In this document: one piece after another, positions 25,953 to 64,000 of the stretch
How the letters are laid out: every line of letters begins with the position of its first letter
How positions within the stretch are numbered: position 1 is the first letter of the stretch
NCBI RefSeq assembly: GCF_006345805.1
Contig: NW_021831828.1
Location: forward strand, 978 to 64,977
Origin: Octopus sinensis
Taxonomy: Eukaryota
DNA length: 64,000 bases
Reading direction: 5' to 3'
Notes under the pieces: model-generated
Told to the model about the DNA's origin: nothing
What the model saw: the letters and a program-made list of their open reading frames with translations, nothing else
The model's database searches: none
Translations under genes and position numbers: made by a program

Positions 25953-27131
<1,179 letters not shown>

Positions 27132-27579: not shown

Positions 27580-28451
27580 TTATTATTAGAACTTTCACGA
27601 GAGCCATAATGTTTATAACCCCGCATGTGCAGCTGAAGATATTAGAGAACTAATTAGATTGCTCCAAGCTCTCCTGTTCTTAGCTAGGTTCCTCAGAGAG
27701 TCCAGATCTTCACCAGATGCCAATGTTTTTTACGGTTTTCAGATCGTTTTGTAAACAATCAGGAGGCTAGTTCTTGGTTTTCCACGAAAGTGTCCTACAT
27801 TAGAGAGGGGTAGTAATCCTCCAATGCGATGTTCGGGGGGATTTCGGGTCTAACCTCAGGACATGTCCAAAAAGTCTCCAACGAGAGCTAATGATCTCGC
27901 GACTTATTGGCGTACATTCACACTTATTGTACAGTCCGCTTCGCGAGATCCTGGATGGCCAAAACATTCCAGTTATGTTTCTTAGATGATTCCTGTGAAA
28001 CGAGTCGAGCTTCTCCAATTCCTCTTTTGTCGTGTCCCAGGTCCAGAGTTGTATAGAAGAAATGGTTTGATATATGTGTCGTATAGCCCTTGTTTGTGTT
28101 ATTTCCCTTCTGTTTAACCATATGTTTTTTAGCCTGTGTAATGCCGCGTTTGCCAAGGTTTTTCTCCGTATGATATCTTCATTGTCTTCTAAATAGAATC
28201 AAGTTTCTTAGTGTTCCTCCATTTCTCTTTGAGTGGGTTATTTATTCGTCTTATTCTGTCCATTCTATTTTTTTTCCATGCTCACTGTGAGAAACCATTT
28301 CCCAAGTATATCTAGTTTTTTTGTCTTCAGAGATTAGGACGGCATAAATCACTTTTTCTATTTTTCCTTGGTATAATAGCCTCAGTTCCCTCATAGCAGC
28401 CTCCAAGTATATTGTGAATAGTAGCGGAGACAGGGAGTCTCCCTGAGGAGT
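27580..28451 (-). mobile_element. RTE-clade LINE 3' part, cut at its 5' side by the satellite array
   Basis: PQGDSLSPLLFTIYLEAAMREL and KLDSFHRNHLRNI...WRLFGHVLRL; short TAA-repeat tail near 27580. Confidence 0.8.
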
Positions 28452-30513
28452 GAAGGTGCCAGGATGTGATGATTTAGGGGTACTTGACATTATGTAATTA
28501 ATTGCGTAAATATACTACAATTAAGAAAGGTCTCTAGATGTTAATAATGTGTGGTAATTGAAATTATGTAATAAATTGCCTAATATATTACGTAATTTTT
28601 GGTGGTCCCTATATGTAAAGATATATGGGTCTTGAAATTATGGACTAAATTGTGTTATATACTTTCCAATTTGGAGAGGTTTCTAAATTTTAGGATATGG
28701 GGGTAAAGATTGTATCATGAATTAAAAACATTTATATTATGCAATATAAGGAGGTTCCAGGTGGTTCCAGACTATGTAATAATTTGCGTAATAAATTGAT
28801 TAAAATATAAAATTTGGAGAGCTCCCAGGATGTGAGGATATATGGGTTCTTGAGATTATTAAACAATTTCGTTATGTATTTTCATTTGAAGAGATCTCTA
28901 AATGTTTGGATATGGGGATACTTGAGATTTTGAAATAAATTATGTAACATGCAATTTGGGAAGGTCCCAGGATGTGAGGATTTACGGGTTCTTGAGATTA
29001 ATTAATAAATTTCGTTATATATTTTCATTTGGAGATGTCTCTAAATGTTGGGATATGGGGTTACTTGAGATTTTGAAATAAATTATGTAACATATTATGC
29101 AATTTGGGGAGGTGCCAGGATGTGAGGATTTAGGGGTACTTGAGATTATGTAATTAATTGCGTAATATATACTACAATTAAGAGAGGTCTCTAGATGTGT
29201 GAATAAGTGGGTACTTTAGATTATGTAAAAAATTGCCTAATATATACGTAATTTTTGGAGGTCCCTATATGTAAAGATATATGGGTTCTTGAGATTATGT
29301 ACTAAATTGTGTTATATACTTTCCAATTTAGAGAGGTTTCTTAATTTTAGGATATGGGGGTACATGAGATTATATCATAAATTGAGTAACATTTATATTA
29401 TGCAATATGGTGAGGTTGCAGGATGTAAGGATATGGGGGTTCTTGAAATTATGTAATAAATTGTGTAAAATTTGAATTTTGGAGAATTTCCAGGATGTGA
29501 GGATATATTGTTTCTTGAGATTATTTAATAGATTGCGTTATATATTTTCAATTGGAGAGGTCCCTAAATGTTGGGATATGGAGGTACTTGAAATTTTGTA
29601 ATAAATTATGTAACATATTATGCAATTTGGGAGAGGTGTCAGGATGTGAGGATTTAGGGGTACTTGAGATTATGTAATTAATTGCGTAATATCAACTACA
29701 ATTTAAGAGGTCTCTAGATGTGTGAATAAGTGGGTACTTGAGATTATGTACTAAATTGTGTTATATACTTTCCAATTTAGAGAGGTTTCTTAATTTTAGG
29801 ATATGGGGGTACTTGAGATTATATCATAAATTGAGTAACATTTATATTATGCAATATGGTGAGGTTGCAGGATGTAAGGATATGGGGGTTCTTGAAATTA
29901 TGTAATAAATTGCGTAAAATTTGAATTTTGGAGAATTTCCAGGATGTGAGGATATATTGGTTCTTGAGATTATTTAATAGATTGCGTTATATATTTTCAT
30001 TTGGAGATGTCTCTAAATGTTGGGATATGGGGTTACTTGAGATTTTGAAATAAATTATGTAACATATTATGCAATTAGGGGAATGCCAGGATGTGAGGAT
30101 TTAGGGGTACTTGAGATTATGTAATTAATTGCGTAATATATACTACAATTAAGAGAGGTCTTTAGATGTGTGAAAAAGTGCGTAATTGAGATTATGTAAT
30201 AAATTGCCTAATATATTACGTAATTTTTGGAGGTCCCTATATGTAAAGATATATGGGTTCTTGAGATTATGTACTAAATTGCGTTATATACTTTCCAATT
30301 TGGAGATGTTTCTAAATTTTAGGTTATGGGGGTACTTAATATTGTATCATAAATTGAGTAACATTTATATTATCAATTTGGGGAGGTGTCAGGATGTGAG
30401 GATTTAGGGGTACTTGAGATTATGTAATTAATTGCGTAACAAATTGCGTAAAATATGAATTTTGGAGAGTTTCCAAGATGTGAGGATATATTGGTTCTTG
30501 AGATTATTTAATA

Positions 30514-31104
30514 TGTCGCGAGCGCAGCGAGCGACCACTCAATTTCTAGATCCGATCAATCAAAAAATCTATAAATTGACAAATACCCAGGCTTGTATTT
30601 GGGATTAAATATATTCGATAACAAAAATTAAAATCGATGCCAAAGCAGAATGAGCTTTAAAACCGATTTCATAAATAAAAATAATATTTTAAAATTTATA
30701 ATTGATATTTTAGAATAATGAGAAAAAATCTAAATGCTTCATAATTTATAAAAATGTCAAAACAAGAATCTTCTGAAGGAGCAAGCCTGTCTGCACAGTT
30801 CATTTTTGATTAGAAGACCTAATTTTAGAGATTAAAACGAAAATATAGCAATGAGATCTGTCAAATTATTACCCCCCTCACAACCTAAACCAAATTAGCG
30901 TTCAGTATTCATTGATTTTACTTTTTCTATTAAGGTCTACTTATAAATTATTTTATGGGATTCAATGGAAAACTTAAGTTATTTCAATTTTAATTTTAAA
31001 TCATGTTAAAATTTTAAATAATTTAATAAATATATTTGTTGATGATAGGCTTGTTAGGTGTCAAAGTTGCGTCTAGCGCTCGGTCGCGCGCTGCGCTCGC
31101 GACA
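30514..31104. mobile_element. MITE copy 1 within the satellite (Ginger-like termini)
   Basis: 23-bp TIR TGTCGCGAGCGCAGCGAGCGACC (1 mismatch); 5-bp TSD TAATA at 30509-30513 and 31105-31109. The empty site TTATTTAATAGATTGC occurs in other array units. Confidence 0.88.
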
Positions 31105-33580
31105 TAATAGATTGCATTATATATTTTCATTTGGAGATGTCTGTAAATGTTGGGATATGGGGTTACTTGAGATTTTGAAATAAATTATGTAACATATTAT
31201 GCAATTTGGGGAGGTGCCAGGATGTGAGGATTTAGGGGTACTTGAGATTATGTAATTAATTGCGTAATATCAACTACAATTTAAGAGGTCTCTAGATGTG
31301 TGAATAAGTGGGTAGTTGAGATTGTGTAATAAATTGCATAATATATTACGTAATTTTTGGAGGTCCCTATATGTAAAGATATATGGGTTCTTGAGATTAT
31401 GTACTAAATTGTGTTATATACTTTCCAATTTAGAGAGGTTTCTTAATTTTAGGATATGGGGGTACTTGAGATTATATCATAAATTGAGTAACATTTATAT
31501 TATGCAATATGGTGAGTTTGCAGAATGTAAGGATATGGGGGTTCTTAAAATTATGTAATAAATTGCGTAAAATTTGAATTTTGGAGAATTTCCAGGATGT
31601 GAGGATATATTGGTTCTTGAGATTATTTAATAGATTGCGTTATATATTTTCAATTGGAGAGGTCCCTAAATGTTGGGATATGGAGGTACTTGAAATTTTG
31701 TAATAAATTATGTAACATATTATGCAATTTGGGAGAGGTGTCAGGATGTGAGGATTTAGAGGTACTTGAGATTATGTAATTAATTGCGTAATATAAACTA
31801 CAATTTAAGAGGTCTCTAGATGTGTGAATAAGTGGGTACTTGAGATTATGCACTAAATTGTGTTATATACTTTCCAATTTAGAGAGGTTTCTTAATTTTA
31901 GGATATGGGGGTACTTGAGATTATATCATAAATTGAGTAACATTTATATTATGCAATATGGTGAGGTTGCAGGATGTAAGGATATGGGGGTTCTTGAAAT
32001 TATGTAATAAATTGCGTAAAATTTGAATTTTGGAGAATTTCAGGATGTGAGGATATATGGTTCTTGAGATTATTTAATAGATTGCGTTATATATTTTCAT
32101 TTGGGAGATCTCTAAATGTTGGGATATGGGGTTACTTAAGATTTTGTAATAAATTATGTAACATATTATGCAATTAGGGGAATGCCAGGATGTGAGGATT
32201 TAGGGGTACTTGAGATTATGTAATTAATTGCGTAATATATACTACAATTAAGAGAGGTCTCTAGATGTGTGAATAAGTGGGTACTTTAGATTATGTAAAA
32301 AATTGCCTAATATATACGTAATTTTTGGAGGTCCCTATATGTAAAGATATATGGGTTCTTGAGATTATGTACTAAATTGTGTTATATACTTTCCAATTTA
32401 GAGAGGTTTCTTAATTTTAGGATATGGGGGTACATGAGATTATATCATAAATTGAGTAACATTTATATTATGCAATATGGTGAGGTTGCAGGATGTAAGG
32501 ATATGGGGGTTCTTGAAATTATGTAATAAATTGTGTAAAATTTGAATTTTGGAGAATTTCCAGGATGTGAGGATATATTGGTTCTTGAGATTATTTAATA
32601 GATTGCGTTATATATTTTCAATTGGAGAGGTCCCTAAATGTTGGGATATGGAGGTACTTGAAATTTTGTAATAAATTATGTAACATATTATGCAATTTGG
32701 GAGAGGTGTCAGGATGTGAGGATTTAGGGGTACTTGAGATTATGTAATTAATTGCGTAATATCAACTACAATTTAAGAGGTCTCTAGATGTGTGAATAAG
32801 TGGGTACTTGAGATTATGTACTAAATTGTGTTATATACTTTCCAATTTAGAGAGGTTTCTTAATTTTAGGATATGGGGGTACTTGAGATTATATCATAAA
32901 TTGAGTAACATTTATATTATGCAATATGGTGAGGTTGCAGGATGTAAGGATATGGGGGTTCTTGAAATTATGTAATAAATTGCGTAAAATTTGAATTTTG
33001 GAGAATTTCCAGGATGTGAGGATATATTGGTTCTTGAGATTATTTAATAGATTGCGTTATATATTTTCATTTGGAGAGATCTCTAAATGTTGGGATATGG
33101 GGTTACTTGAGATTTTGAAATAAATTATGTAACATATTATGCAATTAGGGGAATGCCAGGATGTGAGGATTTAGGGGTACTTGAGATTATGTAATTAATT
33201 GCGTAATATATACTACAATTAGAGAGGTCTTTAGATGTGTGAAAAAGTGCGTAATTGAGATTATGTAATAAATTGCCTAATATATTACGTAATTTTTGGA
33301 GGTCCCTATATGTAAAGATATATGGGTTCTTGAGATTATGTACTAAATTGCGTTATATACTTTCCATTTGGAGATGTTTCTAAATTTTAGGTTATGGGGG
33401 TACTTAATATTGTATCATAATTGAGTAACATTTATATTATCAATTTGGGGAGGTGTCAGGATGTGAGGATTTAGGGGTACTTGAGATTATGTAATTAATT
33501 GCGTAACAAATTGCGTAAAATATGAATTTTGGAGAGTTTCCAAGATGTGAGGATATATTGGTTCTTGAGATTATTTAATA

Positions 33581-34169
33581 TGTCGCGAGCGCAGCGAGCG
33601 ACCACTCAATTTCTAGATCCGATCAATCAAAAAATCTATAAATTGACAAATACCCAGGCTTGTATTTGGGATTAAATATATTCGATAACAAAAATTAAAA
33701 TCGATGCCAAAGCAGAATGAGCTTTAAAACCGATTTCATAAATAAAAATAATATTTTAAAATTTATAATTGATATTTTAGAATAATGAGAAAAAATCTAA
33801 ATGCTTCATAATTTATAAAAATGTCAAAACAAGAATCTTCTGAAGGAGCAAGCCTGTCTGCACAGTTCATTTTTGATTAGAAGACCTAATTTTAGAGATT
33901 AAAACGAAAATATAGCAATGAGATCTGTCAAATTATTACCCCCCTCACAACCTAAACCAAATTAGCGTTCAGTATTCATTGATTTTACTTTTTCTATTAA
34001 GGTCTACTTATAAATTATTTTATGGGATTCAATGGAAAACTTAAGTTATTTCAATTTTAATTTTAAATCATGTTAAAATTTTAAATAATTTAATAAATAT
34101 ATTTGTTGAATAGGCTTGTTAGGTGTCAAAGTTGCGTCTAGCGCTCGGTCGCGCGCTGCGCTCGCGACA
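33581..34169. mobile_element. MITE copy 2 within the satellite
   Basis: Near-identical to copy 1; same monomer position and same TAATA TSD. Confidence 0.88.
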
Positions 34170-35906
34170 TAATAGATTGCATTATATATTTTCATTTGGA
34201 GATGTCCTCTAAATGTTGGGATATGGGGTTACTTGAGATTTTGAAATAAATTATGTAACATATTATGCAATTTGGGGAGGTGCCAGGATGTGAGGATTTA
34301 GGGGTACTTGAGATTATGTAATTAATTGCGTAATATCAACTACAATTTAAGAGGTCTCTAGATGTGTGAATAAGTGGGTAGTTGAGATTGTGTAATAAAT
34401 TGCATAATATATTACGTAATTTTTGGAGGTCCCTATATGTAAGATATATGGGTTCTTGAGATTATGTACTAAATTGTGTTATATACTTTCCAATTTAGAG
34501 AGGTTTCTTAATTTTAGGATATGGGGGTACTTGAGATTATATCATAAATTAGGTGAGTAACATTTATATTATGCAATTAGGGGAGGTGTCAGGATGTGAG
34601 GATTTAGGTTTTCATTAGCCTGCAAGGATGTGATGATTTAGGGGTACTTGAGATTATGTAATTAATTGCGTAATATATACTACAATTAAGAGAGGTCTTT
34701 AGATGTGTGAATAAGTGGGTAATTGAGATTATGTAATAAATTGCCTAATATATTACGTAATTTTTGGAGGTCCCTATATGTAAAGATATATGGGTTCTTG
34801 AGATTATGTACTAAATTGTGTTATATACTTTCCAATTTGGAGAGGTTTCTAAATTTTAGAATATGGGGGTACTTAAGATTGTATCATGAATTAAATAACA
34901 TTTATATTATGCAATATAAGGAGGTTCCAGGTGGTTCCAGACTATGTAATAATTTGCGTAATAAATTGCTTAAAATATAAAATTTGGAGAGCTCCCAGGA
35001 TGTGAGGATATATGGGTTCTTGAGATTATTTAAACAATTTCGTTATGTATTTTCATTTGGAGAGATCTCTAAATGTTTGGATATGGGGATACTTGAGATT
35101 TTGAAATAAATTATGTAACATGCAATTTGGGAAGGTGCCAGGATGTGATGATTTAGGGGTACTTGACATTATGTAATTAATTGCGTAATATATACTACAA
35201 TTAAGAAAGGTCTCTAGATGTTAAATAAGTGGGTAATTGAAATTATGTAATAAATTGCCTAATATATTACGTAATTTTTGGTGGTCCCTATATGTAAAGA
35301 TATATGGGTTCTTGAGATTATGTACTAAATTGTGTTATATACTTTCCAATTTGGAGAGGTTTCTAAATTTTAGGATATGGAGGTACTTGAGATTATATCA
35401 TAAATTGAGTAACATTTATATTATGCAATTTGGGGAGGTGTCAGGATGTGAGGATTTAGGGGTACTTGAGATTATGTAATTAATTGCGTAATATCAACTA
35501 CAATTTAAGAGGTCTCTAGATGTGTGAATAAGTGGGTACTTTACATTATGTAATAAATTGCCTAATATATTACGTAATTTTTGGAGGTCCATATATGTAA
35601 AGATATATGGGTTCTTGAGATTATGTATTAAATTGTGTTATATACTTTCCAATTTAGAGAGGTTTCTTAATTTTAGGATATGGGGGTACTTGAGATTATA
35701 TCATAAATTAGGTGAGTAACATTTATATTATGCAATTAGGGGAGGTGTCAGGATGTGAGGATTTAGGTTTTCATTAGCCTGCAAGGATGTGATGATTTAG
35801 GGGTACTTGAGATTATGTAATTAATTGCGTAACAAATTGCGTAAAATATGAATTTTGGAGAGTTTCCAAGATGTGAGGATATATTGGTTCTTGAGATTAT
35901 TTAATA

Positions 35907-36495
35907 TGTCGCGAGCGCAGCGAGCGACCACTCAATTTCTAGATCCGATCAATCAAAAAATCTATAAATTGACAAATACCCAGGCTTGTATTTGGGATTA
36001 AATATATTCGATAACAAAAATTAAAATCGATGCCAAAGCAGAATGAGCTTTAAAACCGATTTCATAAATAAAAATAATATTTTAAAATTTATAATTGATA
36101 TTTTAGAATAATGAGAAAAAATCTAAATGCTTCATAATTTATAAAAATGTCAAAACAAGAATCTTCTGAAGGAGCAAGCCTGTCTGCACAGTTCATTTTT
36201 GATTAGAAGACCTAATTTTAGAGATTAAAACGAAAATATAGCAATGAGATCTGTCAAATTATTACCCCCCTCACAACCTAAACCAAATTAGCGTTCAGTA
36301 TTCATTGATTTTACTTTTTCTATTAAGGTCTACTTATAAATATTTTATGGGATTCAATGGAAAACTTAAGTTATTTCAATTTTAATTTTAAATCATGTTA
36401 AAATTTTAAATAATTTAATAAATATATTGTTGATGATAGGCTTGTTAGGTGTCAAAGTTGCGTCTAGCGCTCGGTCGCGCGCTGCGCTCGCGACA
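35907..36495. mobile_element. MITE copy 3 within the satellite
   Basis: Near-identical to copies 1 and 2; same position and TSD. Confidence 0.88.
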
Positions 36496-39400
36496 TAATA
36501 GATTGCATTATATATTTTCATTTGGAGATGTCTCTAAATGTTGGGATATGGGGTTACTTGAGATTTTGAAATAAATTATGTAACATATTATGCAATTTGG
36601 GGAGGTGCCAGGATGTGAGGATTTAGGGGTACTTGAGATTATGTAATTAATTGCGTAATATCAACTACAATTTAAGAGGTCTCTAGATGTGTGAATAAGT
36701 GGGTAGTTGAGATTGTGTAATAAATTGCATAATATATTACGTAATTTTTGGAGGTCCCTATATGTAAAGATATATGGGTTCTTGAGATTATGTACTAAAT
36801 TGTGTTATATACTTTCCAATTTAGAGAGGTTTCTTAATTTTAGGATATGGGGGTACTTGAGATTATATCATAAATTAGGTGAGTAACATTTATATTATGC
36901 AATTAGGGGAGGTGTCAGGATGTGAGGATTTAGGTTTTCATTAGCCTGCAAGGATGTGATGATTTAGGGGTACTTGACATTATGTAATTAATTGCGTAAT
37001 ATATACTACAGTTAAGAAAGGTCTCTAGATGTTAAATAAGTGGGTAATTGAAATTATGTAATAAATTGCCTAATATATTACGTAATTTTTGGTGGTCCCT
37101 ATATGTAAAGATATATGCGTTCTTGAAATTATGTACTAAATTGTGTTATATACTTTCCAATTTGGAGAGGTTTCTAAATTTTAGGATATGGGGTTACTTA
37201 AGATTTTGTAATAAATTATGTAACATATTATGCAATTTGGGGAGGTGCCAGGATGTGAGGACTTGAGATTATGTAATTAATTGCGTAATATCAACTACAA
37301 TTTAAGAGGTCTCTAGATGTGTGAATAAGTGGGTACTTTACATTATGTAATAAATTGCCTAATATATTACGTAATTTTTGGAGGTCCCTATATGTAAGAT
37401 ATGGGTTCTTGAGATTATGTACTAAATTGTGTTATATACTTTCCAATTTAGAGAGGTTTCTTAATTTTAGGATATGGGGGTACTTGAGATTATATCATAA
37501 ATTGAGTAACATTTATATTATGCAATGGGTGAGGTTGCAGGATGTAAGGATATGGGGGTTCTTGAAATTATGTAATAAATTGCGTAAAATTTGAATTTTG
37601 GAGAATTTCCAGGATGTGAGGATATATTGGTTCTTGAAATTATTTAATAGATTGCGTTATATATTTTCATTTGGAGAGGTCCCTAAATGTTGGGATATGG
37701 AGGTACTTGAAATTTTGTAATAAATTATGTAACATATTATGCAATTTGGGAGAGGTGTCAGGATGTGAGGATTTAGGGGTACTTGAGATTATGTAATTAA
37801 TTGCGTAATATCAACTACAATTTAAGAGGTCTCTAGATGTGTGAATAAGTGGGTACTTGAGATTATGCACTAAATTGTGTTATATACTTTCCAATTTAGA
37901 GAGGTTTCTTAATTTTAGGATATGGGGGTACTTGAGATTATATCATAAATTGAGTAACATTATATTATGCAATATGGTGAGGTTGCAGGATGTAAGGATA
38001 TGGGGGTTCTTGAAATTATGTAATAAATTGCGTAAAATTTGAATTTTGGAGAATTTCCAGGATGTGAGGATATATGGTTCTTGAAATTATTTAATAGATT
38101 GCGTTATATATTTTCATTTGGAGAGATCTCTAAATGGGGATATGGGGTTACTTAAGATTTTGTAATAAATTATGTAACATATTATGCAATTTGGGGAGGT
38201 GCCAGGATGTGAGGACTTGAGATTATGTAATTAATTGCGTAATATATACTACAATTAAGAGAGGTCTCTAGATGTGTGAATAAGTGGGTACTTTAGATTA
38301 TGTAATAAATTGCCTAATATATTACGTAATTTTTGGAGGTCCCTATATGTAAAGATATATGGGTTCTTGAGATTATGTACTAAATTGTGTTATATACTTT
38401 CCAATTTAGAGAGGTTTCTTAATTTTAGGATATGGGGGTACTTGAGATTATATCATAATTGAGTAACATTTATATTATGGAATATGGTGAGGTTGCAGGA
38501 TGTAAGGATATGGGGGTTCTTGAAATTATGTAATAAATTGCGTAAAATTTGAATTTTGGAGAATTTCCAGGATGTGAGGATATATTGGTTCTTGGGATTA
38601 TTTAATAGATTGCGTTATATATTTTCAATTGGAGAGGTCCCTAAATGTTGGGATATGGAGGTACTTGAAATTTTGTAATAAATTATGTAACATATTATGC
38701 AATTTGGGAGAAGTGTCAGGATGTGAGGATTTAGGGGTACTTGAGATTATGTAATTAATTGCGTAATATCAACTACAATTTAAGAGGTCTCTAGATGTGT
38801 GAATAAGTGGGTACTTGAGATTGTGTAATAAATTGCCTAATATATTACGTAATTTTTGGAGGTCCCTATATGTAAAGATATAAGGGTTCTTGAGATTATG
38901 TACTAAATTGCGTTATATACTTTCCAATTTGGAGATGTTTCTAAATTTTAGGATATGGGGGTACTTGAAATTATATCATAAATTGAGTGAGTAACATTTA
39001 TATTATGCAATTAGGGGAGGTGTCAGGATGTGAGGATTTAGGTTTTCTTTAGCCTATGTAATAATTTGCGTAATAAATTGCTTAAAATATGAAATTTCCA
39101 GAGGTCCCAGGATGTGAGGATATATGGGTTCTTGAGATTATTTAAACAATTTCGTTATGTATTTTCATTTGGAGAGGTCTCTAAATGTTTGGATATGGGG
39201 GTACTTCTGTAATAAATTGCATAATATATTACGTAATTTTTGGAGGTACCTATATGTAAAGATATATGGGTTCTTGAGATTATGTACTAAATTGTGTTAT
39301 ATACTTTACAATTTAGAGAGGTTTCTTAATTTTAGGATATGGGGGTACTTGAGATTATATCATAAATTGAGTAACATTTATATTATGCAATATGGTGAGG

Positions 39401-42400
39401 TTGCAGGATGTAAGGATATGGGGGTTCTTGAAATATGTAATAAATAGCGCGTAAAATTTGAATTTTGGAGAATTTCCATGTAATCCAACAATTTCGTTAT
39501 GTATTTTCAATTGGAGAGGTCTCTAAATGTTTGGATATGGGGGTACTTGAGATTTTGAAATAAATTATGTAACATATTATGCAATTTGGGAAGATGCAAG
39601 GATGTGATGATTTAGGGTTCTTGAGATTATGTACTAAATTGTGTTATATACTTTACAATTTAGAGAGGTTTCTTAATTTTAGGATATGGGGGTACTTGAG
39701 ATTATATCATAAATTGAGTAACATTTATATTATGCAATATGGGGAATGCCAGGATGTGAGGATTTAGGGGTACTTGAGATTATGTAATTAATTGCGTAAT
39801 ATATACTACAATTAAGAGAGGTCTCTAGATGTGTGAATAAGTGGGTACTTTAGATTATGTAAAAAATTGCCTAATATATACGTAATTTTTGGAGGTCCCT
39901 ATATGAAGATATATGGGTTCTTGAGATTATGTACTAAATTGTGTTATATACTTTCCAATTTAGAGAGGTTTCTTAATTTTAGGATATGGGGGTACTTGAG
40001 ATTATATCATAAATTGAGTAACATTTATATTATGCAATATGGTGAGGTTGCAGGATGTAAGGATATGGGGGTTCTTGAAATTATGTAATAAATTGCGTAA
40101 AATTTGAATTTTGGAGAATTTCCAGGATGTGAGGATATATTGGTTCTTGAGATTATTTAATAGATTGCGTTATATATTTTCAATTGGAGAGGTCCCTAAA
40201 TGTTGGGATATGGAGGTACTTGAAATTTTGTAATAAATTATGTAACATATTATGCAATTTGGGAGAGGTGTCAGGATGTGAGGATTTAGGGGTACTTGAG
40301 ATTATGTAATTAATTGCGTAATATCAACTACAATTTAAGAGGTCTCTAGATGTGTGAATAAGTGGGTACTTGAGATTATGCACTAAATTGTGTTATATAC
40401 TTTCCAATTTAGAGAGGTTCATAATTTTAGGATATGGGGGTACTTGAGATTATATCATAAATTGAGTAACATTTATATTATGCAATATGGTGAGGTTGCA
40501 GGATGTAAGGATATGGGGGTTCTTGAAATTATGTAATAAATTGCGTAAAATTTCAATTTTGGAGAATTTCCAGGATGTGAGGATATATTGGTTCTTGAAA
40601 TTATTTAATAGATTGCGTTATATATTTTCATTTGGAGAGATCTCTAAATGTTGGGATATGGGGTTACTTAAGATTTTGTAATAAATTATGTAACATATTA
40701 TGCAATTTGGGGAGGTGCCAGGATGTGAGGACTTGAGATTATGTAATTAATTGCGTAATATATACTACAATTAAGAGAGGTCTCTAGATGTGTGAATAAG
40801 TGGGTACTTTAGATTATGTAATAAATTGCCTAATATATTACGTAATTTTTGGAGGTCCCTATATGTAAAGATATATGGGTTCTTGAGATTATGTACTAAA
40901 TTGTGTTATATACTTTCCAATTTAGAGAGGTTTCTTAATTTTAGGATATGGGGGTACTTGAGATTATATCATAAATTGAGTAACATTTATATTATGCAAT
41001 ATGGTGAGGTTGCAGGATGTAAGGATATGGGGGTTCTTGAAATTATGTAATAAATTGCGTAAAATTTGAATTTTGGAGAATTTCCAGGATGTGAGGATAT
41101 ATTGGTTCTTGGGATTATTTAATAGATTGCGTTATATTTTTCAATTGGAGAGGTCCCTAAATGTTGGGATATGGAGGTACTTGAAATTTTGTAATAAATT
41201 ATGTAACATATTATGCAATTTGGGAGAGGTGTCAGGATGTGAGGATTTAGGGGTACTTGAGATTATGTAATTAATTGCGTAATATCAACTACAATTTAAG
41301 AGGTCTCTAGATGTGTGAATAAGTGGGTACTTGAGATTGTGTAATAAATTGCATAATATATTACGTAATTTTTGGAGGTCCCTATATGTAAAGATATATG
41401 GGTTCTTGAGATTATGTACTAAATTGCGTTATATACTTTCCAATTGGAGATGTTTCTAAATTTTAGGATATGGGGGTACTTGAAATTATATCATAAATTG
41501 AGTGAGTAACATTATATTATGCAATTAGGGGAGGTGTCAGGATGTGAGGATTTAGGTTTTCTTTAGCCTATGTAATAATTTGCGTAATAAATTGCTTAAA
41601 ATATGAAATTTCCAGAGGTCCCAGGATGTGAGGATATATGGGTTCTTGAGATTATTTAAACAATTTCGTTATGTATTTTCATTTGGAGAGGTCTCTAAAT
41701 GTTTGGATATGGGGGTACTTGTGTAATAAATTGCATAATATATTACGTAATTTTTGGAGGTACCTATATGTAAAGATATATGGGTTCTTGAGATTATGTA
41801 CTAAATTGTGTTATATACTTTACAATTTAGAGAGGTTTCTTAATTTTAGGATATGGGGGTACTTGAGATTATATCATAAATTGAGTAACATTTATATTAT
41901 GCAATATGGTGAGGTTGCAGGATGTAAGGATATGGGGGTTCTTGAAATTATGTAATAAATTGCGTAAAATTTGAATTTTGGAGAATTTCCATGTAATCCA
42001 ACAATTTCGTTATGTATTTTCATTTGGAGAGGTCTCTAAATGTTTGGATATGGAGGTACTTGAGATTTTGAAATAAATTATGTAACATATTATGCAATTT
42101 GGGAAGGTGCAAGGATGTGATGATTTAGGGGTTCTTGAGATTATGTACTAAATTGTGTTATATACTTTACAATTTAGAGAGGTTTCTTAATTTTAGGATA
42201 TGGGGGTACTTGAGATTATATCATAAATTGAGTAACATTTATATTATGCAATATGGGGAGGTTGCAGGATGTGAGGATATGGGGGTTCTTGAAATTATGT
42301 AATAAATTGCGTAATAAATTGCGTAAAATATGAATTTTGGAGACTACAATTTAGAGAGGTCTCTAGATGTGTGAATAAGTGGGTACTTTAGATTATGTAA

Positions 42401-43299
42401 TAAATTGCCTAATATATTACGTAATTTTTGGAGGTCCCTATATGTAAAGATATATGGGTTCTTGAGATTATGTACTAAATTGCGTTATATACTTTCCAAT
42501 TTGGAGATGTTTCTAATTTTTAGGATATGGGGGTACTTGAGATTATATCATAAATTGAGTGAGTAACATTTATATTATGCAATTTGGGGAGGTCCAGGAT
42601 GTGAGGCTATGGGGGTTCTTTAGACTATATAATAATTTGCGTAATTAATTGCGTAAAATATGTAATTTGGAGAGGTCCCAGGATGTGAGGATTTACGGGT
42701 TCTTGAGATTAATTAATAAATTTCGTTATATATTTTCATTTGGAGATGTCTCTAAATGTTGGATATGGGGTTACTTGAGATTTTGAAATATATTATGTAA
42801 CATATTATGCAATTTGGGGAGGTGCCAGGATGTGAGGATTTAGGGGTACTTGAGATTATGTAATTAATTGCGTAATATCAACTACAATTTAAGAGGTCTC
42901 TAGATGTGTGAATAAGTGGGTACTTGAGATTGTGTAATAAATTGCCTAATATATTACGTAATTTTTGGAGGTCCCTATATGTAAAGATATATGGGTTCTT
43001 GAGATTATGTACTAAATTGCGTTATATACTTTCCAATTTATAGAAGTTTCTTAATTTTAGGATATGGGGCTACTTGAGATTATATCATAAATTGAGTAAC
43101 ATTTATATTATGCAATATGGGGAGGTTGCAGGATGTGAGGATATGGGGGTTCTTGAAATTATGTAATAAATTTCGTAATAAATTGCGTAAAATATGAATT
43201 TTGGAGAGTTCCCAGGATGTGAGGATATATTGGTTCTTGAGATTATTTAATTTAAAATTAGGCGTGCTACGCCTATTCCAATGCGTAGTCGGTAATCAC

Positions 43300-46690: not shown

Positions 46691-47537
46691 TCAGCCTTTT
46701 TGGACTATAGGAATCACGGGGAAATCAGGGCCAAGTTTAACTTTATATAATAGATTTCTTGAAAGTTTCTGGTTGAAGTTATTTATAAAGCCTAAATGAC
46801 CCTATAAGCCTTGAGGTCTCACCTCTATTAGTGTGAGGCTGTGATAGCTTTTTCATGCTATTAGCTGCATAGCCCGGATATTCCGCTTGCAAGATATGTA
46901 TGAAAAGAACTTATTTTAGCACGTACGTTACCACACAACCTCAATGGTTCGAGAATCAACAGGAAGCTCGTAAAATTGTGGGATCAGTTGGTAGCAAATT
47001 CAAGTCCAGTCTCAGTCCGGTTCTGATTAACTTTTAGCGTGCCAATAAGTTGACCTGTGCATTTTAACATCCCAAAAAACTTCTTTTTGTCTTTCCAATC
47101 GATGATGCCATACACTTTCAAACTCTCTTTTCAATTTCTTTGGATTTGTCGGCTGACGACTTGCAGGAATTTTGGGGAACCTCCCAATTCCTTCAGAGAT
47201 GTCAAGAAAGAAGAATTGGGGTGAGTTCTGGACAGCAAAAAAAAATTGAACTATGCCGATTTTGTAAATTTTATTTTTAAAAAAATTTGAATTTTTTACC
47301 GGCTTGTGGAGATGAATGATACAGTTGTCATGCGAAAATTTGCAAAACTGAAGGACTATGAACTTCCCCGTACTGAAATGGAGTCAGTTGCCTTCCTTCA
47401 AGAGGTTGGAATCTTTCCTAAAGAAAAAAAATGTCAAAACAGACATTTTATGACCCTTCTCCAACAGCAGGAGAGTACAACATGGGTGTGCCATAAAAGT
47501 GGGTGTCGAACATATAGTTCAAGTGAGTCATTTAGAC

Positions 47538-48403: not shown

Positions 48404-48912
48404 ATTTAGACAACTCCTTCGATGAGCTAATAGATGCCATCGTCAAATTTTGTCCGCCGAATATCACGCTTCGTACTACCAGCTGACCTTTTTTATTGTA
48501 ATAAAGATTTTTTCACTGAGGGATAAGCATCTTTATTAACCAACAACTGTATCTTTTTAGACAGGTGGTCGTTAATAGCTCAGATTTAATTTTGTCGGTA
48601 TTGTTTTGACACCACTAAGCCGGTAAAAAATTCAAATTTTTTTAAAAATAAAATTTACAAAATCGGCATAGTTCAATTTTTTAAATTTTCGATCTAATAT
48701 TCATAAAAATTTTCATTAATTAATTTAGTGCCTATTTTCGTGATTCATGAAATGCAACAGTACCGATTTGGTACTTTAAGTTTTGATTTTTATTAGTTTT
48801 TCAATATTAGAAACAAATTTTTATCTGATAAAATGAATGCTCAATCATTTAATTTCGTAAAAATACATTTTTAACCACATCACAGGTAAAGCAAAACAAC
48901 ATTTTCTTTTTC

Positions 48913-48922
<10 letters not shown>

Positions 48923-48946
<24 letters not shown>

Positions 48947-49611
48947 AGGCAAACTTATTGTTAATGAACGAAAAGAGTTAAAATGCGCAGCGAATCGACT
49001 GGCAATTCCCGCGCATGATGGCCAATGAGATCCTTTGAAAGAGTCTGATCGACTCGTTGGGATCTTTCGTGGCAACCACGAGCTTAGATCCAAGGCGACG
49101 GAGAAACGATAGCGTCTGCGGACCGATGACTCCAGAGGTTTCCACCGCGACTGCAGCGAATAGGTGATTCATGGCCAGGACCCGGTACTTCTTCTGTTTT
49201 GTTAGTTCCGCCTGCTTTGCAACTGAGCCCGGTTCCGCAGCGGAGGCAATTAGATTCTTGGCGGAGAAAGTGTCGGAGCAGGTGGCGTCCCAGATAAGGC
49301 ATTTCCCCTTTTCAAACGGGAAGATTGTCATGCCATCCGGGCGCTTACCGTCGCCTCTGTCGAGCCCGACTGGTTCGAGCTCATTAGGAAACCCCGCCGT
49401 CGTTAGGGCACGGCTCACGGTGTCGTTGATGGCGGCGTGTCGTGGGAAACGTCCGGCACTACGTGAGCAGGAGAGGGGATGATGGCCATAAGGGTCCACT
49501 CTTAAACCGCAGCGGCACTGGTGTGTTTTGCAAATGGGAAGTCCGAGGCGGAGAGAGACGGAAATCCTTACACAGTCGTTGTCCATTAAGGTGCCGATTG
49601 ACGCCATATTT
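48923..49611 (-). mobile_element. Young 5'-truncated CRE-clade copy (RLE domain intact)
   Basis: 209-aa open frame with CRC..DPYGHHPLSC..RH and GKRPDG..WDATC. 26-nt T run at 48921-48946 is the poly(A) tail; candidate TSD TTTGTATT at 48915-48922 and 49612-49619. Confidence 0.9.
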
Positions 49612-49940: not shown

Positions 49941-51723
49941 ATGCTCATTGAAAAAATAGTTTTTTTAGGTGAATTATTATTTACTTTACTTTAGTATTTT
50001 GTTTCAGAATATGCATAAATATGGCAGAAAATGCCTTGTTTGATGCTTTGATCGTCCAAAGTCAATATAATCGAAATGCACGACCACTGGAAAACAACTC
50101 ATTTGACAAACCAGTCGACGTTCGATTAGGATTAAGACTAATTCAGATCACCGACGTGGTGAGAATTCGGTTTATATTTTAGGACGAAAAACGTCAAATC
50201 CTCACGTCTACTCTTCGAATATATCACGTTTTTATTTAAAACTACTTTTTAAGCGTTGGACAGATCCAAGGTTGGTGTGGAATCCAAAAGAATACGAAAA
50301 CATCAAGTTAATGCACATTCCTTCTCGTCTCCTATGGGTTCCGGATATTGGACTTTACAATAAGTTATCCATATTTGTTACGCAACAGTGCCGATGGAAA
50401 TTATGAAATCCCATTAAAAACGAACACTCAGGTGTATTTCAACGGAACAATCATATGGGAACCTGCTGCGATCTACAAAAGTTCATGTCCTATCAACGTT
50501 GAGTTTTTCCCTTTCGACATTCAAGAATGTTACTGGAAATTCGGCTCCTGGACTTACGACGGATCAAAGATAAATCTGATTCACAAAGAAAATAATCTCT
50601 CTAAAAAAGAAACAGACGAACATGGAATCGATTTGACAGAATTCTACCCGAATATCGAATGGGAAGTACTTTCAGTGACAGCAGAGAAGAAAGTCAAGTT
50701 CTACGAGTGCTGTATCGAGCCATATATCGATATATTTTTCTACATCACAATAAGGAGAAAAACAGTGTTTTATCTCGTCAACTTTCTCTTTCCGTGTGTT
50801 TGCATTTCCTTTCTTACGATCCTTGTATTTTATCTCCCTGCCGGATCAGGAGAAAAGATAACTCTGAGTATTTCGATTCTTTTGTCCTTGGCTGTGTTCA
50901 TCCTTCTTTTGGCTGATATTGTGCCCCCGACCTCCCTTGTGATCCCTCTCATTGGCAAATATCTTTTGTTTACTGTTATTTTGGTGACACTTTCCGTCAT
51001 TTTGACAGTGATTGTGCTCAACGTTCACTTCCGGTCGTGTTCTACACATCGAATGCCTATTTGGGTCAAACTACTTTTTTTGTGGGTGTTGCCCTCGTTG
51101 CTTAGAATGCAGAAACTTTATGGATCATTTGAATCAAGCAATAACGACAAAGGATTTGTGAGATTTCTCTACAAATTTCAACAAAAACGAAACAAGCTTA
51201 TAAAGGCATTAAAAAAGTGGTATTATATCAAAAAAGACTCCATAATTGGGAAGAGACCGGCAAGTCCTGTCAGGACTACAACTCCGACGGGAGTCGAAAC
51301 AGAAGCATCGTTGAATTTAAGGAACGACAGTGTTGAACACCTCAATATTTGCATTCGACATAAGATCGATCAAAAGACTAGATACTCAGAATCCATTCGG
51401 AGATCAATTGGTTATGAAAATCAATTTAAACAAAACGAAGAAAAAGAAACGAAAAATCGAATTTTGGGAAATTTGCTGAGTGAATCAATTCAAAGTTGTA
51501 TCGAAGCAGTCAGATTTATCTCAGATATAATGAAGGAAGAAGAGGCAAAGAGTTGTGTATGATTACTTTTTAAACTTTTTAGTCCATGTCAGATTGGCAA
51601 TTTGTCGCTATGGTTTTAGACAGGCTGTTTTTGTGGATTTTTTTTGTAGCGATTTTGATTGGATTTTATACAATTGTCCTTTCTGCGCCAACCTTAGTTG
51701 ACCGTAGAGCTGCAATTGCTTAA
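49941..51723 (+). CDS. CHRNA-like: Nicotinic acetylcholine receptor alpha subunit
   Basis: LWVPDIGLYN, Cys-loop CPINVEFFPFDIQEC, WTYDG, vicinal loop-C cysteines FYECCIEPY, M1-M3, and DWQFVAMVLDRLFLWIF before M4. Introns 49969-49994, 50159-50182, 50228-50253, 50364-50388 and 51557-51582. Confidence 0.94.
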
Positions 51724-56348: not shown

Positions 56349-56956
56349 ATATTTTTACTTAATAATAATTGTGTATTAATATTTTTACTTAATAATAATT
56401 GTGTATTAATTATTAATTATTTGGAGGAAAAAATCAAGAATATGACCAAAAATGTACCATACCGACAGTTAAAGCACAGAGGAGGCAGCATAATGTTATG
56501 GGGGTGTTTTTCGTCTCAAGGAGTGGGTGAACTATTTTTCATAGATGGAATATTAAGTGCCAAGATGTACGTCGAAATTTTGAAAAATTGTTTAGTTTCG
56601 TCCATCAATAAATTAAAGCTAAGAAGCAATTGGACGTTTCAACACGACAACGATTTCAAACATAAAGCTAAAATAACTAGTGAATGGCTTAATAATAATG
56701 GAATAAATGTTCTGAAATGGCCTAGTCAATCTCTTGACTTAAACCCAATTGAAAATTTATGGAAAACGTTAAAAATAGAGGTAAGAAACCGAAGACCTAG
56801 AAATATAGTGGACTTAAAAGCATTCTGCCGTGAGGAGTGGAATAAAATTTCCAAAGAAGAATGCTTTAAATTAATAGATACATACAAAAGAAGATTAGAA
56901 GCAGTAATTGTTGCAAAAGGGCATGCAACAAAATATTAATAAGGCATCGTGCCAAC

Positions 56957-63268: not shown

Positions 63269-64000
63269 CAGTCCGACCCCAAAATGGGGCAGACCCCAGG
63301 GGTGGGGCACCCTCGGATTTTGGGGCACCCCCGCAATTTGGGGCACTTTATTCCAAAAGTACATTTTGGCAGAAAAAAAATAAAAATCGATAAAAAATTA
63401 TGGAATTTTTGGGGCACCATAAAATCATTTATAAGGAATTAAAAATAAAATAAAATTATAATAAATTAATTATTTTTTGTTTTATTTTCAATTTATATTT
63501 TTATTGTTGTGGTTATGGATTACGAAACTAAATTGAAGATTGCTAAAGAAATTTTGAAGAAAAATTTATCTGAGAGGCAACTAATGAAAAAGTACAACAC
63601 AAGTAAAGGAACAATATCAAGAATAAAACGAAATATTGTACCTTTCTTGCAACACGGCAATACTATTTCTGAGGAATATGACACATTTAAAGCCGATAAA
63701 GATAAATTTGATGATCAAGTCTTTGAAATATTTCAAAGACTACGCGTAGATAAAATTCCGATTTCAGGCCCTATTTTGAAAAAAATTGCCTTAGTTACAG
63801 CTTCAAAAATTGGATTTACTTCTTTTAAAGCTTCCAATGGGTGGCTTGATAGATTTAAATGCTGCAGTTTAATCGGGGAAAAACTTAATCCATTGATTAT
63901 TGGAAAATATAAAAAACCTCGGTGTCTAAAAAATTTTGATGTTCAAGATTTTGGGTTATTGTATTCATCTTCTCAAAATGCATGGATGACTGGAAAGACT
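63269..64000 (+). mobile_element. pogo/Tigger element 5' part with an in-frame internal deletion; runs off the window
   Basis: TA|CAGTCCGACCCC left end. Open frame from 63515: HTH, CENP-B-type HTH (PISGPILKK..A...F.ASNGWLDRFK), joined directly to CCSLIGEKLNPLIIGK...AWMT. Confidence 0.8.

What the first reader, a model, noticed from the sequence alone, without database searches (positions are those of the whole stretch)
28452..43251. Hierarchical higher-order satellite built on a ~74-bp monomer; candidate centromeric or germline-limited DNA
Seen: seven diverged monomer types (spacings 72, 74, 75, 74, 75, 79, 72 bp) form a ~520-bp unit. A 6-mer (~448 bp) arises by loss of one monomer, the two alternate (~968 bp), and blocks are re-duplicated at ~3.07 kb (29161 vs 32231), ~2.33 kb and ~2.5 kb. 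Orientation is uniform and G/C skew is strong. Inference: two monomers (~149 bp) approximate one nucleosome wrap, and the layering resembles alpha-satellite HORs, yet the array lies between ordinary genes. If the host is a dicyemid, where developmental DNA elimination and circular DNA have been reported, it is a candidate eliminated sequence.
Basis: partly seen in the sequence, partly recalled or inferred. Interest (0 to 1): 0.72.

Follow-up and report, generated by a model that had tools for sequence, protein, structure and literature searches.

The report
Layered satellite repeat carrying a transposon
A 14.8-kb block of about 170 head-to-tail 75-bp repeats, ordered in 7- and 6-unit sets, is real, but it looks like an ordinary locally amplified satellite that also copied a small transposon three times; nothing in the sequence shows it is a centromere or eliminated DNA.

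Summary
Window 28452-43251 holds about 170 same-strand monomers of about 75 bp in seven types. Identity is 91-98% within a type and 65-78% between types. The types run in the order ABCGHEF (about 523 bp). A 6-mer lacking B (about 448 bp) alternates with it, giving a roughly 971-bp 13-mer. Blocks are re-duplicated at offsets of 3073, 2326 and 2498 bp.

The 3.07-kb and 2.33-kb periodicities are set by a 593-bp element with 24-bp terminal inverted repeats (MITE-like). It inserted once into an E monomer and was then copied with its flanks to three copies (99.7% identical). The right edge of the array breaks at exactly the nucleotide of that element's left junction. The left edge abuts a LINE reverse transcriptase cut in mid-domain.

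The host fits a dicyemid: 25-26-bp introns, about 36% GC, many LINEs and spiralian-like genes.

No sequence test supports the centromere or nucleosome idea. There is no 10-11-bp WW periodicity, no shared dyad symmetry, no CENP-B-like box, and genes lie 1.3 and 6.7 kb away. Elimination and circle formation cannot be tested here.

Best reading: a non-coding higher-order-repeat satellite growing by unequal exchange. It is a new member of a known kind.

The parts
28452..43251 (+). Whole satellite array: about 170 monomers of about 75 bp, all in one orientation, G-rich on the + strand, plus three inserted 593-bp elements
   Evidence: TRF; nhmmer monomer map; GC skew; composition
29119..29642 (+). 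Example of a 7-monomer higher-order unit, A1-B-C-G-H-E-F (about 524 bp)
   Evidence: Monomer typing and start positions
29643..30089 (+). Example of the 6-monomer unit, A2-C-G-H-E-F (about 447 bp; B absent). With the preceding 7-mer it forms the roughly 971-bp 13-mer
   Evidence: self-BLAST offsets 449 and 954-970
29135..29160 (+). One copy of the conserved box (consensus GGGTACTTGAGATTATGTAATAAATTG, monomer positions 16-42) shared by all seven types
   Evidence: 14 differences among the type consensuses against 32 expected, permutation p=0.006; 34 exact pattern matches, all in the array
30513..31105 (+). MITE-like element, copy 1: 593 bp, 24-bp terminal inverted repeats (23/24 complementary) ATGTCGCGAGCGCAGCG..., AT-rich non-coding interior. 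It sits in an E monomer with a 3-bp (AAT) or 5-bp (TAATA) target duplication
   Evidence: comparison with intact E monomers
33580..34170 (+). MITE-like element, copy 2 (99.7% identical to copy 1, identical flanks)
35906..36496 (+). MITE-like element, copy 3 (99.7% identical to copy 1, identical flanks)
28968..34577 (+). Two copies of a roughly 3.07-kb composite block of satellite plus MITE (28968-31508 and 32041-34577, 98.9% identical)
   Evidence: Self-BLAST
33458..37205 (+). Two copies of a roughly 2.33-kb composite block of satellite plus MITE (33458-34880 and 35784-37205, 98.7% identical)
   Evidence: Self-BLAST
37119..42931 (+). Two copies of a roughly 2.5-kb satellite-only block (37119-40377 and 39617-42931, 95.3% identical)
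   Evidence: Self-BLAST
43216..43251 (+). Terminal half-monomer 'P' (first half of E). The array ends after ...GAGATTATTTAAT, the same nucleotide as the left junction of the MITE in the three internal copies
   Evidence: Four-way alignment; sequence
27800..28456 (-). Degraded LINE fragment whose reverse transcriptase is cut in mid-domain at the left edge of the array (GTFTPQGDSLSPLLF...). Seven bases (AGGTGCC) are shared with the end of an F monomer at the junction
   Evidence: Translation; RVT_1 profile positions 117-153 of 205 begin at the boundary; junction sequence
25953..27130 (-). Nearest gene on the left: UDP-glucose 4-epimerase-like exons. The start codon is about 1.3 kb from the array
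   Evidence: ORF translations with epimerase motifs; weak GDP_Man_Dehyd hit for the last exon. The family name is assigned from motifs I recognise
49973..51720 (+). Nearest gene on the right: nicotinic acetylcholine receptor-like gene with 25- and 26-bp introns (50364-50388 and 51557-51582)
   Evidence: Pfam; tblastn; frame joins

Best explanation
This is a non-coding tandem satellite that grew where it sits by repeated unequal exchange or replication slippage between misaligned repeats.

**Inferred order of events.**
1. An old monomer of about 75 bp diversified into seven types.
2. A 7-monomer set then became the unit of amplification.
3. One copy lost monomer B, and the resulting 7+6 pair (about 971 bp) was amplified.
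4. A 593-bp non-autonomous DNA transposon with terminal inverted repeats inserted once into an E monomer.
5. Recent multi-kb unequal exchanges copied that transposon with its satellite flanks, making new 3.07-kb and 2.33-kb composite units.

The array has no demonstrable cellular job. The conserved 27-bp half of every monomer may be a protein-binding site or simply a slowly changing part.

**Shown:** the structure, the layers of identity, the single origin of the three transposon copies, and the absence of coding, RNA-family or mobile-element signatures for the array as a whole.

**Inferred:** the mechanism (unequal exchange) and the order of events.
For: - Monomers are uniform in orientation and confined to 28452-43251.
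- Identity is nested: 65-78% between types, 91-98% within types, 94-95% between higher-order units, and 95.3-98.9% between kb-scale blocks. The transposon copies are 99.7% identical.
- The loss of B is clean and in monomer register.
- The three transposon copies share flanks over more than 1 kb, so there was one insertion followed by duplication.
- Monomers at the edges differ slightly more from their type consensus than most of the interior (6-7% vs 4-5%), as expected for homogenisation by exchange. A central 34.5-37.5 kb stretch is about as diverged as the edges.
- There is no ORF longer than 96 aa, and its translation has no homologue.
- There is no Rfam match, even at E<=1.
- The array flanks share no target duplication or terminal repeats beyond chance.
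- Short euchromatic satellite arrays, higher-order repeats and links between transposons and satellites are well documented in other animals (PMC5615363).
Against: - Only one locus could be examined. No related sequence was found in any searchable collection, so genome-wide copy number and location are unknown.
- The conserved 27-bp box (p=0.006) hints at some constraint.
- The right edge of the array coincides to the nucleotide with the transposon junction. Simple unequal exchange does not explain this; it implies an extra event there, such as a transposase-induced break or deletion.
Confidence: 0.6

Rival explanations
1. Centromeric satellite. The array, or the family it belongs to, is the DNA on which the kinetochore of this chromosome assembles, as alpha-satellite higher-order repeats are in primates.
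For: - It has higher-order-repeat architecture with recently homogenised blocks.
- It is the most AT-rich 15 kb of the window.
- Transposons lie inside and around it.
- A conserved box is present in every monomer.
- Small genomes can have centromeres of only a few kb (my own knowledge, e.g. some yeasts; PMC7025860 abstract for Malassezia).
Against: - It is only 14.8 kb long, with a gene start 1.3 kb away and another gene 6.7 kb away.
- There is no 10-11-bp WW periodicity.
- Dyad symmetry is not shared across monomer types.
- There is no CENP-B-like box.
- Nothing is known about dicyemid centromeres.
- The prior that any one tandem array is the centromere is low in a genome reported as 49% repeats (PMC6736024).
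Confidence: 0.12
2. Developmentally excised DNA. In somatic cells of a dicyemid host the array is looped out by recombination between its own direct repeats. It then appears as extrachromosomal circles or is lost, so it would be germ-line enriched.
For: - The host features fit a dicyemid (PMC6736024, PMC6543705, PMC13644364).
- Chromatin elimination and circular DNA have been reported for Dicyema (Noto et al. 2003 and Awata et al. 2006, as cited in PMC6543705).
- Direct repeats of 449, 523 and 971 bp at 94-99% identity are good substrates for intrachromosomal recombination.
- Such repeats would assemble as 'circular' contigs under the criterion used in PMC6543705 (terminal repeats of at least 77 nt). 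Those authors themselves suspect that some short 'circles' are direct repeats.
Against: - The array is assembled in continuity with genes on both sides.
- No depth, junction or stage data are available.
- The abundant circles reported in PMC6543705 are mostly 600-800 bp and unrelated to one another in sequence, not a single repeat family.
- The same paper found that circle coverage is not lower than that of linear contigs and doubts diminution.
- No boundary motif is evident.
Confidence: 0.1
3. Transposon-borne or transposon-derived repeat. The array is the expanded internal or tail repeat of a mobile element (for example Helitron/Helentron-like or MITE-like), so the family is spread by transposition and this locus is one insertion.
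For: - The right edge of the array falls exactly at a transposon junction site.
- A 6-bp-stem hairpin (AGGCGT GCT ACGCCT) lies 9 bases outside the right edge.
- The array sits among LINE and DNA-transposon fragments.
- Satellites carried by or derived from MITE-like elements are known (PMC5615363).
Against: - The two array flanks share no terminal inverted repeats or target duplication.
- No Rep/helicase or matching transposase was found in the window.
- The monomer has no similarity to the 593-bp element or to anything else in the window.
- There are no other copies in the searchable collections.
Confidence: 0.1
4. Assembly artefact. The long near-identical blocks (98.7-99.3%) are collapsed or expanded mis-joins, or haplotype duplications made by the assembler, so the higher layers are not real.
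For: The differences between the youngest copies are mostly 1-2-base indels in A/T runs, the usual long-read error type.
Against: The monomer, 7-mer, 6-mer and 13-mer layers rest on hundreds of consistent substitutions. The blocks also have different lengths and contents (3073, 2326 and 2498 bp), which is not what simple duplication errors produce.
Confidence: 0.05

Closest known systems
Primate alpha-satellite higher-order repeats
   Same: Head-to-tail monomers occur in several diverged types (here 65-78% identical) in a fixed order. The multi-monomer unit is copied at much higher identity (here 91-99%). Variant units differ by whole monomers. Transposon insertions occur in the array.
   Different: The monomer is about 75 bp, not 171 bp, and has no sequence relation. 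The array is 14.8 kb, not megabases. It has no CENP-B-like box and is flanked closely by genes. A centromere location is unknown.
Short satellite arrays in euchromatin near genes (for example Tribolium TCAST1 and Drosophila 1.688, as reviewed in PMC5615363)
   Same: A tandem array of kb scale sits between genes and transposon fragments, and its copies are homogenised locally.
   Different: Those families also form large heterochromatic blocks and are dispersed at many loci. For this repeat only one locus is known. Any effect on neighbouring genes (here GALE, 1.3 kb away) is untested.
Composite satellite units that include a transposon, and satellites derived from MITE-like elements (PMC5615363; PMC5932611 for transposon insertions seeding satellites)
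   Same: A small terminal-inverted-repeat element has become part of the amplified unit, making new 3.07-kb and 2.33-kb repeats.
   Different: Here the transposon is a passenger in a pre-existing satellite, not the source of the monomer. There is no similarity between monomer and element.
Eliminated germ-line satellites (for example the Ascaris 121-bp repeat; my own knowledge) and the circular DNAs reported in Dicyema (PMC6543705 and the papers it cites)
   Same: It is a tandem non-coding repeat in a lineage for which somatic genome rearrangement has been reported.
   Different: There is no evidence of differential retention. The array is internal and flanked by retained-looking genes. The reported Dicyema circles are mostly unrelated 600-800-bp sequences.

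Membership tests
Satellite DNA with higher-order repeat organisation | Head-to-tail tandem monomers in one orientation | tested here: met
   170 plus-strand monomers. The minus-strand hits are only weak internal palindrome matches.
Satellite DNA with higher-order repeat organisation | Distinct monomer types in fixed order, with multi-monomer units far more alike than neighbouring monomers | tested here: met
   Seven types; identity 0.91-0.98 within types and 0.65-0.78 between types; lag peaks at 7, 13, 20 and 26.
Satellite DNA with higher-order repeat organisation | High genomic copy number or long arrays in heterochromatin (classical definition, PMC5615363) | not testable with these tools
   Only this locus is available. 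No relatives were found in the metagenome scan or the protein-space search.
Alpha satellite (as a sequence family) | 171-bp monomer homologous to primate alphoid DNA, with a CENP-B box in a subset of monomers | tested here: not met
   The monomer is 72-79 bp. No match to the CENP-B box core lies inside the array, and the window count equals chance.
Centromeric satellite | Occupied by CENP-A/CENH3 nucleosomes and the kinetochore | not testable with these tools
   This needs ChIP or CUT&Tag. No dicyemid centromere data were found.
Centromeric satellite | Sequence features often invoked: about 10-bp WW phasing, or dyad symmetry/non-B DNA in each monomer | tested here: not met
   Spectral peaks are at 12.4, 8.8-9.1 and 8.3 bp, not 10-11 bp. 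Only type B folds better than shuffles (z=-3.2); the other six have z from -1.3 to +1.2.
Centromeric satellite | Gene-poor setting | tested here: inconclusive
   Genes lie 1.3 kb to the left and 6.7 kb to the right. This would be unusual for a large regional centromere but is possible for a very small one.
Germline-limited or developmentally eliminated DNA | Lower or absent representation in somatic cells than in germ-line cells, or excision junctions | not testable with these tools
   No reads or stage-specific data are available. The flanks share no boundary motif.
MITE / non-autonomous terminal-inverted-repeat DNA transposon (the 593-bp insert) | Terminal inverted repeats | tested here: met
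   24-bp ends, 23 of 24 complementary, with 17 perfect.
MITE / non-autonomous terminal-inverted-repeat DNA transposon (the 593-bp insert) | Target-site duplication relative to an empty site | tested here: met
   Intact E monomers read ...ATTATTTAATAGATTGC... The interrupted copy reads ...TTTAAT[element]AATAGATTGC... This gives a 3-bp AAT duplication, or a 5-bp TAATA one if the ends are set one base further in.
MITE / non-autonomous terminal-inverted-repeat DNA transposon (the 593-bp insert) | Small size, no coding capacity | tested here: met
   The element is 593 bp with a 25% GC interior. The only ORF touching it is 48 aa and starts in the satellite.
MITE / non-autonomous terminal-inverted-repeat DNA transposon (the 593-bp insert) | Many dispersed copies, and a related autonomous element | tested here: inconclusive
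   The window holds only the three co-amplified copies. The terminal repeat was not found in prokaryotic genome contigs, as expected. The host genome is not searchable.
Transposon-borne tandem repeats (Helitron/Helentron or MITE cargo) | Array bounded by the element's constant termini and target duplication, with a Rep/helicase or transposase relative | tested here: not met
   The flanks share no terminal repeats or duplication beyond chance. No Rep/helicase was found in the window.

The most novel reading that the evidence does not exclude
The host is a dicyemid, and this array is one of the sequences that somatic cells loop out as circular DNA or under-replicate, with recombination between its 449/523/971-bp direct repeats as the excision mechanism. 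Alternatively, it is the first dicyemid centromere repeat. Either reading would give a defined, PCR-addressable locus for testing the old reports of chromatin elimination in Dicyema.
Probability: 0.12. Interest if true: 0.7.

Novelty: new member of a known kind. Interest (0 to 1): 0.3.

Why it matters
As it stands, this is a well-resolved example of how a satellite builds layers (monomer, 7-mer, 13-mer, kb blocks) and absorbs a transposon into a new repeat unit. That is textbook satellite behaviour. I found no description of a satellite family for dicyemids in the searchable literature.

If the host is Dicyema, the locus has practical value. It has unique flanks (GALE on one side, an nAChR gene on the other), so germ-line versus soma copy number and circle formation can be measured at a single defined place. 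It also shows that arrays with 449-971-bp units exist in such genomes. These would masquerade as 'circular contigs' in short-read assemblies, which is a caution for earlier claims.

Tried and rejected
1. **Relatives elsewhere.** A metagenome scan with the conserved box gave one contig with a single non-repeated match, which is chance. The longest array ORF (96 aa) had no homologue in 5.8 billion proteins. The transposon terminus is absent from prokaryotic genome contigs. So no second locus could be studied.
2. **Host identification by protein identity.** The nAChR exon and an 880-aa LINE ORF found nothing above about 65% and 53% identity. The species is not in the database, and the host is inferred only from intron size, GC and gene affinities.
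3. **Structured RNA or ribozyme satellite.** There is no Rfam hit at the gathering thresholds or at E<=1, and there are no tRNAs.
4. **Monomer hairpins or non-B DNA.** These are not shared across types.
5. **Nucleosome phasing signal.** Absent.
6. **Array as an insertion into the left-flank LINE.** The missing half of the reverse transcriptase is not on the right side. No LINE target duplication was found.
7. **Array as a mobile unit.** The flanks share no terminal repeats or duplication.
8. **The 34-36-bp and 57-bp 'gaps' in the monomer map as captured flank DNA.** They are truncated or degenerate monomers of the long-H (M/D) type.
9. **The 6-mer as an A/B hybrid from unequal exchange.** Rejected. 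A is intact (A2 subtype) and B is simply absent.
10. **Motifs of the Dicyema 'circular contigs'.** They are given only in figures, so no comparison was possible.
11. **Bacterial promoter/terminator scan on the transposon.** Irrelevant for a eukaryote and ignored.

Full report

Yes. Tandem Repeats Finder places periods of 74-75, 149, 224, 303, 347, 373 and 448-449 bp only between 28463 and 43190. A profile search with the 75-bp consensus finds 170 plus-strand monomers from 28463 to 43252. Outside the array it finds a single chance-level hit.

The array is strongly strand-asymmetric. GC skew is +0.29 to +0.50, against about 0 in the flanks. Composition is A .31, C .077, G .229, T .38.

Clustering all monomers by pairwise identity gives seven main types: A 74, B 75, C 75, G 79, H 72, E 73 and F 75 bp. 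They run in the order ABCGHEF, which sums to 523 bp. Mean identity is 0.91-0.98 within types and 0.65-0.78 between them. Identity against monomer lag peaks at 7, 13, 20 and 26.

The 6-mer is ACGHEF. B is missing cleanly, and the A in that context is always the A2 subtype. The true recurring unit is therefore a 13-mer, A1BCGHEF-A2CGHEF, of about 971 bp.

- 28968-31508 vs 32041-34577: 98.9%, offset 3073.
- 33458-34880 vs 35784-37205: 98.7%, offset 2326.
- 37119-40377 vs 39617-42931: 95.3%, offset 2498.

Types C/E and G/F are each other's closest relatives (0.78 and 0.77). This points to an older dimer stage, but the lag-2 signal today is negligible.

**2.

The monomer map has three gaps of about 626 bp. 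Each holds a near-identical 593-bp element at 30513-31105, 33580-34170 and 35906-36496. Its 24-bp terminal inverted repeats read ATGTCGCGAGCGCAGCG(A/C)GCGACC, with 23 of 24 bases complementary. The interior is AT-rich and non-coding.

Intact E monomers read ...ATTATTTAATAGATTGC... The interrupted ones read ...TTTAAT[element]AATAGATTGC... The insertion therefore made a 3-bp (AAT) target duplication, or a 5-bp (TAATA) one if the ends are set one base further in. This is a MITE-like DNA transposon.

The three copies share identical flanks over more than 1 kb and lie inside the 3.07-kb and 2.33-kb duplicated blocks. They therefore descend from one insertion that was later copied along with the satellite. 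The '3.07 kb' and '2.33 kb' layers are composite units of satellite plus transposon.

**3. The edges.**

*Right edge.* The last monomers are ...ABCG-I-P. I is an 84-bp long variant of H that occurs only four times: three times just before the transposon and once here. P is the first half of E and stops after GAGATTATTTAAT. That is exactly the nucleotide of the transposon's left junction.

This terminal block is more diverged from the three internal copies than they are from each other: about 8 differences in the last 150 bp, against 0. A boundary coinciding with the insertion site within one base has a chance of roughly 3 in 523 positions of the 7-mer.

I therefore infer an event anchored at the transposon end. 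Examples are excision or a transposase-induced break followed by loss of the element and everything to its right. This step is inferred, not shown.

*Left edge.* The array abuts a minus-strand LINE whose reverse transcriptase starts in mid-domain at the boundary (RVT_1 profile positions 117-153 of 205). Seven bases (AGGTGCC) are shared between the LINE and the end of an F monomer. I found no LINE target duplication. The two flanks share no terminal repeats or duplication beyond chance. The array as a whole does not look like a mobile insertion.

**4. Setting and host.**

The window is from an animal. It holds Hsp90 exons, an nAChR gene (49973-51720, +), an F-box ORF, several LINE fragments and a DDE_3 transposase fragment.

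Epimerase (GALE-like) exons lie at 25953-27130 on the minus strand, so that gene's start is 1.3 kb from the array. 'Between ordinary genes' is correct, but the 23-kb intergenic stretch is full of transposon debris.

The nAChR gene has GT-AG introns of 25 bp (50364-50388) and 26 bp (51557-51582). The best protein relatives are protostomes at 55-65% identity.

These features match published Dicyema figures: GC 36.7%, 49% repeats, LINE expansion and mean intron 38 bp (PMC6736024); median intron 27 bp and eight nAChR-like genes (PMC6543705). Among the 51 metazoan genomes compared in PMC13644364, introns under 30 bp were found only in myxobolid myxozoans and Dicyema japonicum.

The protostome affinity of the receptor argues against a myxozoan. 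I rate a dicyemid host at about 0.7. The species itself is not in the protein database.

**5. Tests of the functional ideas.**

- *Coding.* No ORF exceeds 96 aa, and its translation has no homologue.
- *RNA.* No Rfam family matches at the curated thresholds or at E<=1.
- *Nucleosome fit.* The WW, AA/TT and SS spectra of the array peak at harmonics of 12.4, 8.8-9.1 and 8.3 bp, not at 10-11 bp. The sequence encodes no rotational positioning signal, and 2 x 75 = 150 bp is only arithmetic.
- *Non-B DNA.* Only type B has a hairpin better than shuffles (z=-3.2). The other six do not.
- *CENP-B-like box.* None lies in the array.
- *Constraint.* Monomer positions 16-42 (GGGTACTTGAGATTATGTAATAAATTG) are much better conserved among the seven types than the rest: 14 differences against 32 expected, permutation p=0.006. 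This is the one hint of constraint. It is the kind of 'box' seen in many satellites and says nothing specific about centromeres.
- *Homogenisation pattern.* Monomers at both edges, and in the rearranged middle part, are a little more diverged from their type consensus than the rest. This fits homogenisation by exchange.

**6. Most likely mechanism.**

The array is a selfish or neutral satellite that expanded in place by unequal exchange or slippage at successively larger registers. A MITE was caught and co-amplified. At least one transposon-associated break shaped the right edge (confidence 0.6).

The rivals are:
- a centromere repeat (0.12);
- DNA that is looped out or eliminated in somatic cells (0.10);
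- transposon cargo (0.10);
- an assembly artefact for the youngest layers (0.05).

The elimination idea cannot be tested here, but one remark is useful. Arrays with 449-, 523- and 971-bp units at 94-99% identity would satisfy the 'circular contig' criterion used for Dicyema sp. (terminal repeats of at least 77 nt; PMC6543705). Those authors already suspected that part of their short circles were direct repeats.

**7. Comparison with known systems, and novelty.**

In architecture this works like alpha-satellite higher-order repeats. It also resembles the short euchromatic satellite arrays of insects, and satellites that carry or derive from transposons (PMC5615363, PMC5932611). It is not a member of the alpha-satellite family: the monomer length is different, there is no homology and there is no CENP-B box.

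I found no description of dicyemid satellites or centromeres in the searchable literature. This is a new member of a known kind.

Interest is modest (0.3). It would rise only if depth, Circle-seq or CENH3 data tied the array to elimination or to centromeres.

Noticed in passing
window 47240-47305 and 48617-48682: A perfect 66-nt inverted repeat pair encloses 1311 bp. The ORFs inside have no Pfam hit. It looks like another young terminal-inverted-repeat transposon in the right-hand intergenic region.
   Followed up: partly
window 53658-56300 (-) and 48978-49607 (-): There is an 880-aa LINE ORF at 51.6% GC and a LINE C-terminal fragment at 55.6% GC in a genome of about 36% GC. The best named relatives are Octopus sinensis proteins (49% identity for the ORF, 66% over 173 aa for the fragment). 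Cephalopods are the hosts of dicyemids, so host-to-parasite transfer comes to mind. However, unnamed metagenome proteins and a moth protein score similarly, so this is only a lead.
   Followed up: partly
window 50364-50388 and 51557-51582: The nAChR-like gene has GT-AG mini-introns of 25 and 26 bp, and at least two more are apparent upstream from the frame shifts. This is the strongest clue to the host lineage.
   Followed up: yes
window 25953-27130 (-): A UDP-glucose 4-epimerase-like gene has its first exon only about 1.3 kb from the satellite, with a degraded LINE fragment filling the space between. Any effect of the array on this gene's expression is unknown.
   Followed up: no
window 56421-56939 (+) and 56349-56410: A DDE_3 (Tc1/mariner-type) transposase fragment lies directly after a perfect 30-bp x 2.1 tandem repeat.
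   Followed up: no
window 28452-43251 vs flanks: CpG observed/expected is 0.46 in the array against 0.90-1.05 in both flanks, while the transposon termini are CpG-rich. Because the array is one short sequence repeated about 170 times, this may only reflect the composition of the monomer.
   Followed up: no
window 43261-43275: A short hairpin (AGGCGT GCT ACGCCT) lies 9 bases beyond the right edge of the array. It could be the terminus of an unrecognised element, but no partner end was found.
   Followed up: partly
window 48902-48946 and 63303-63346: There is a 45-nt T run, and an 18-bp GC-rich unit (TGGGGCACCCCCGCAATT) repeated 2.4 times. Neither is related to the satellite.
   Followed up: no
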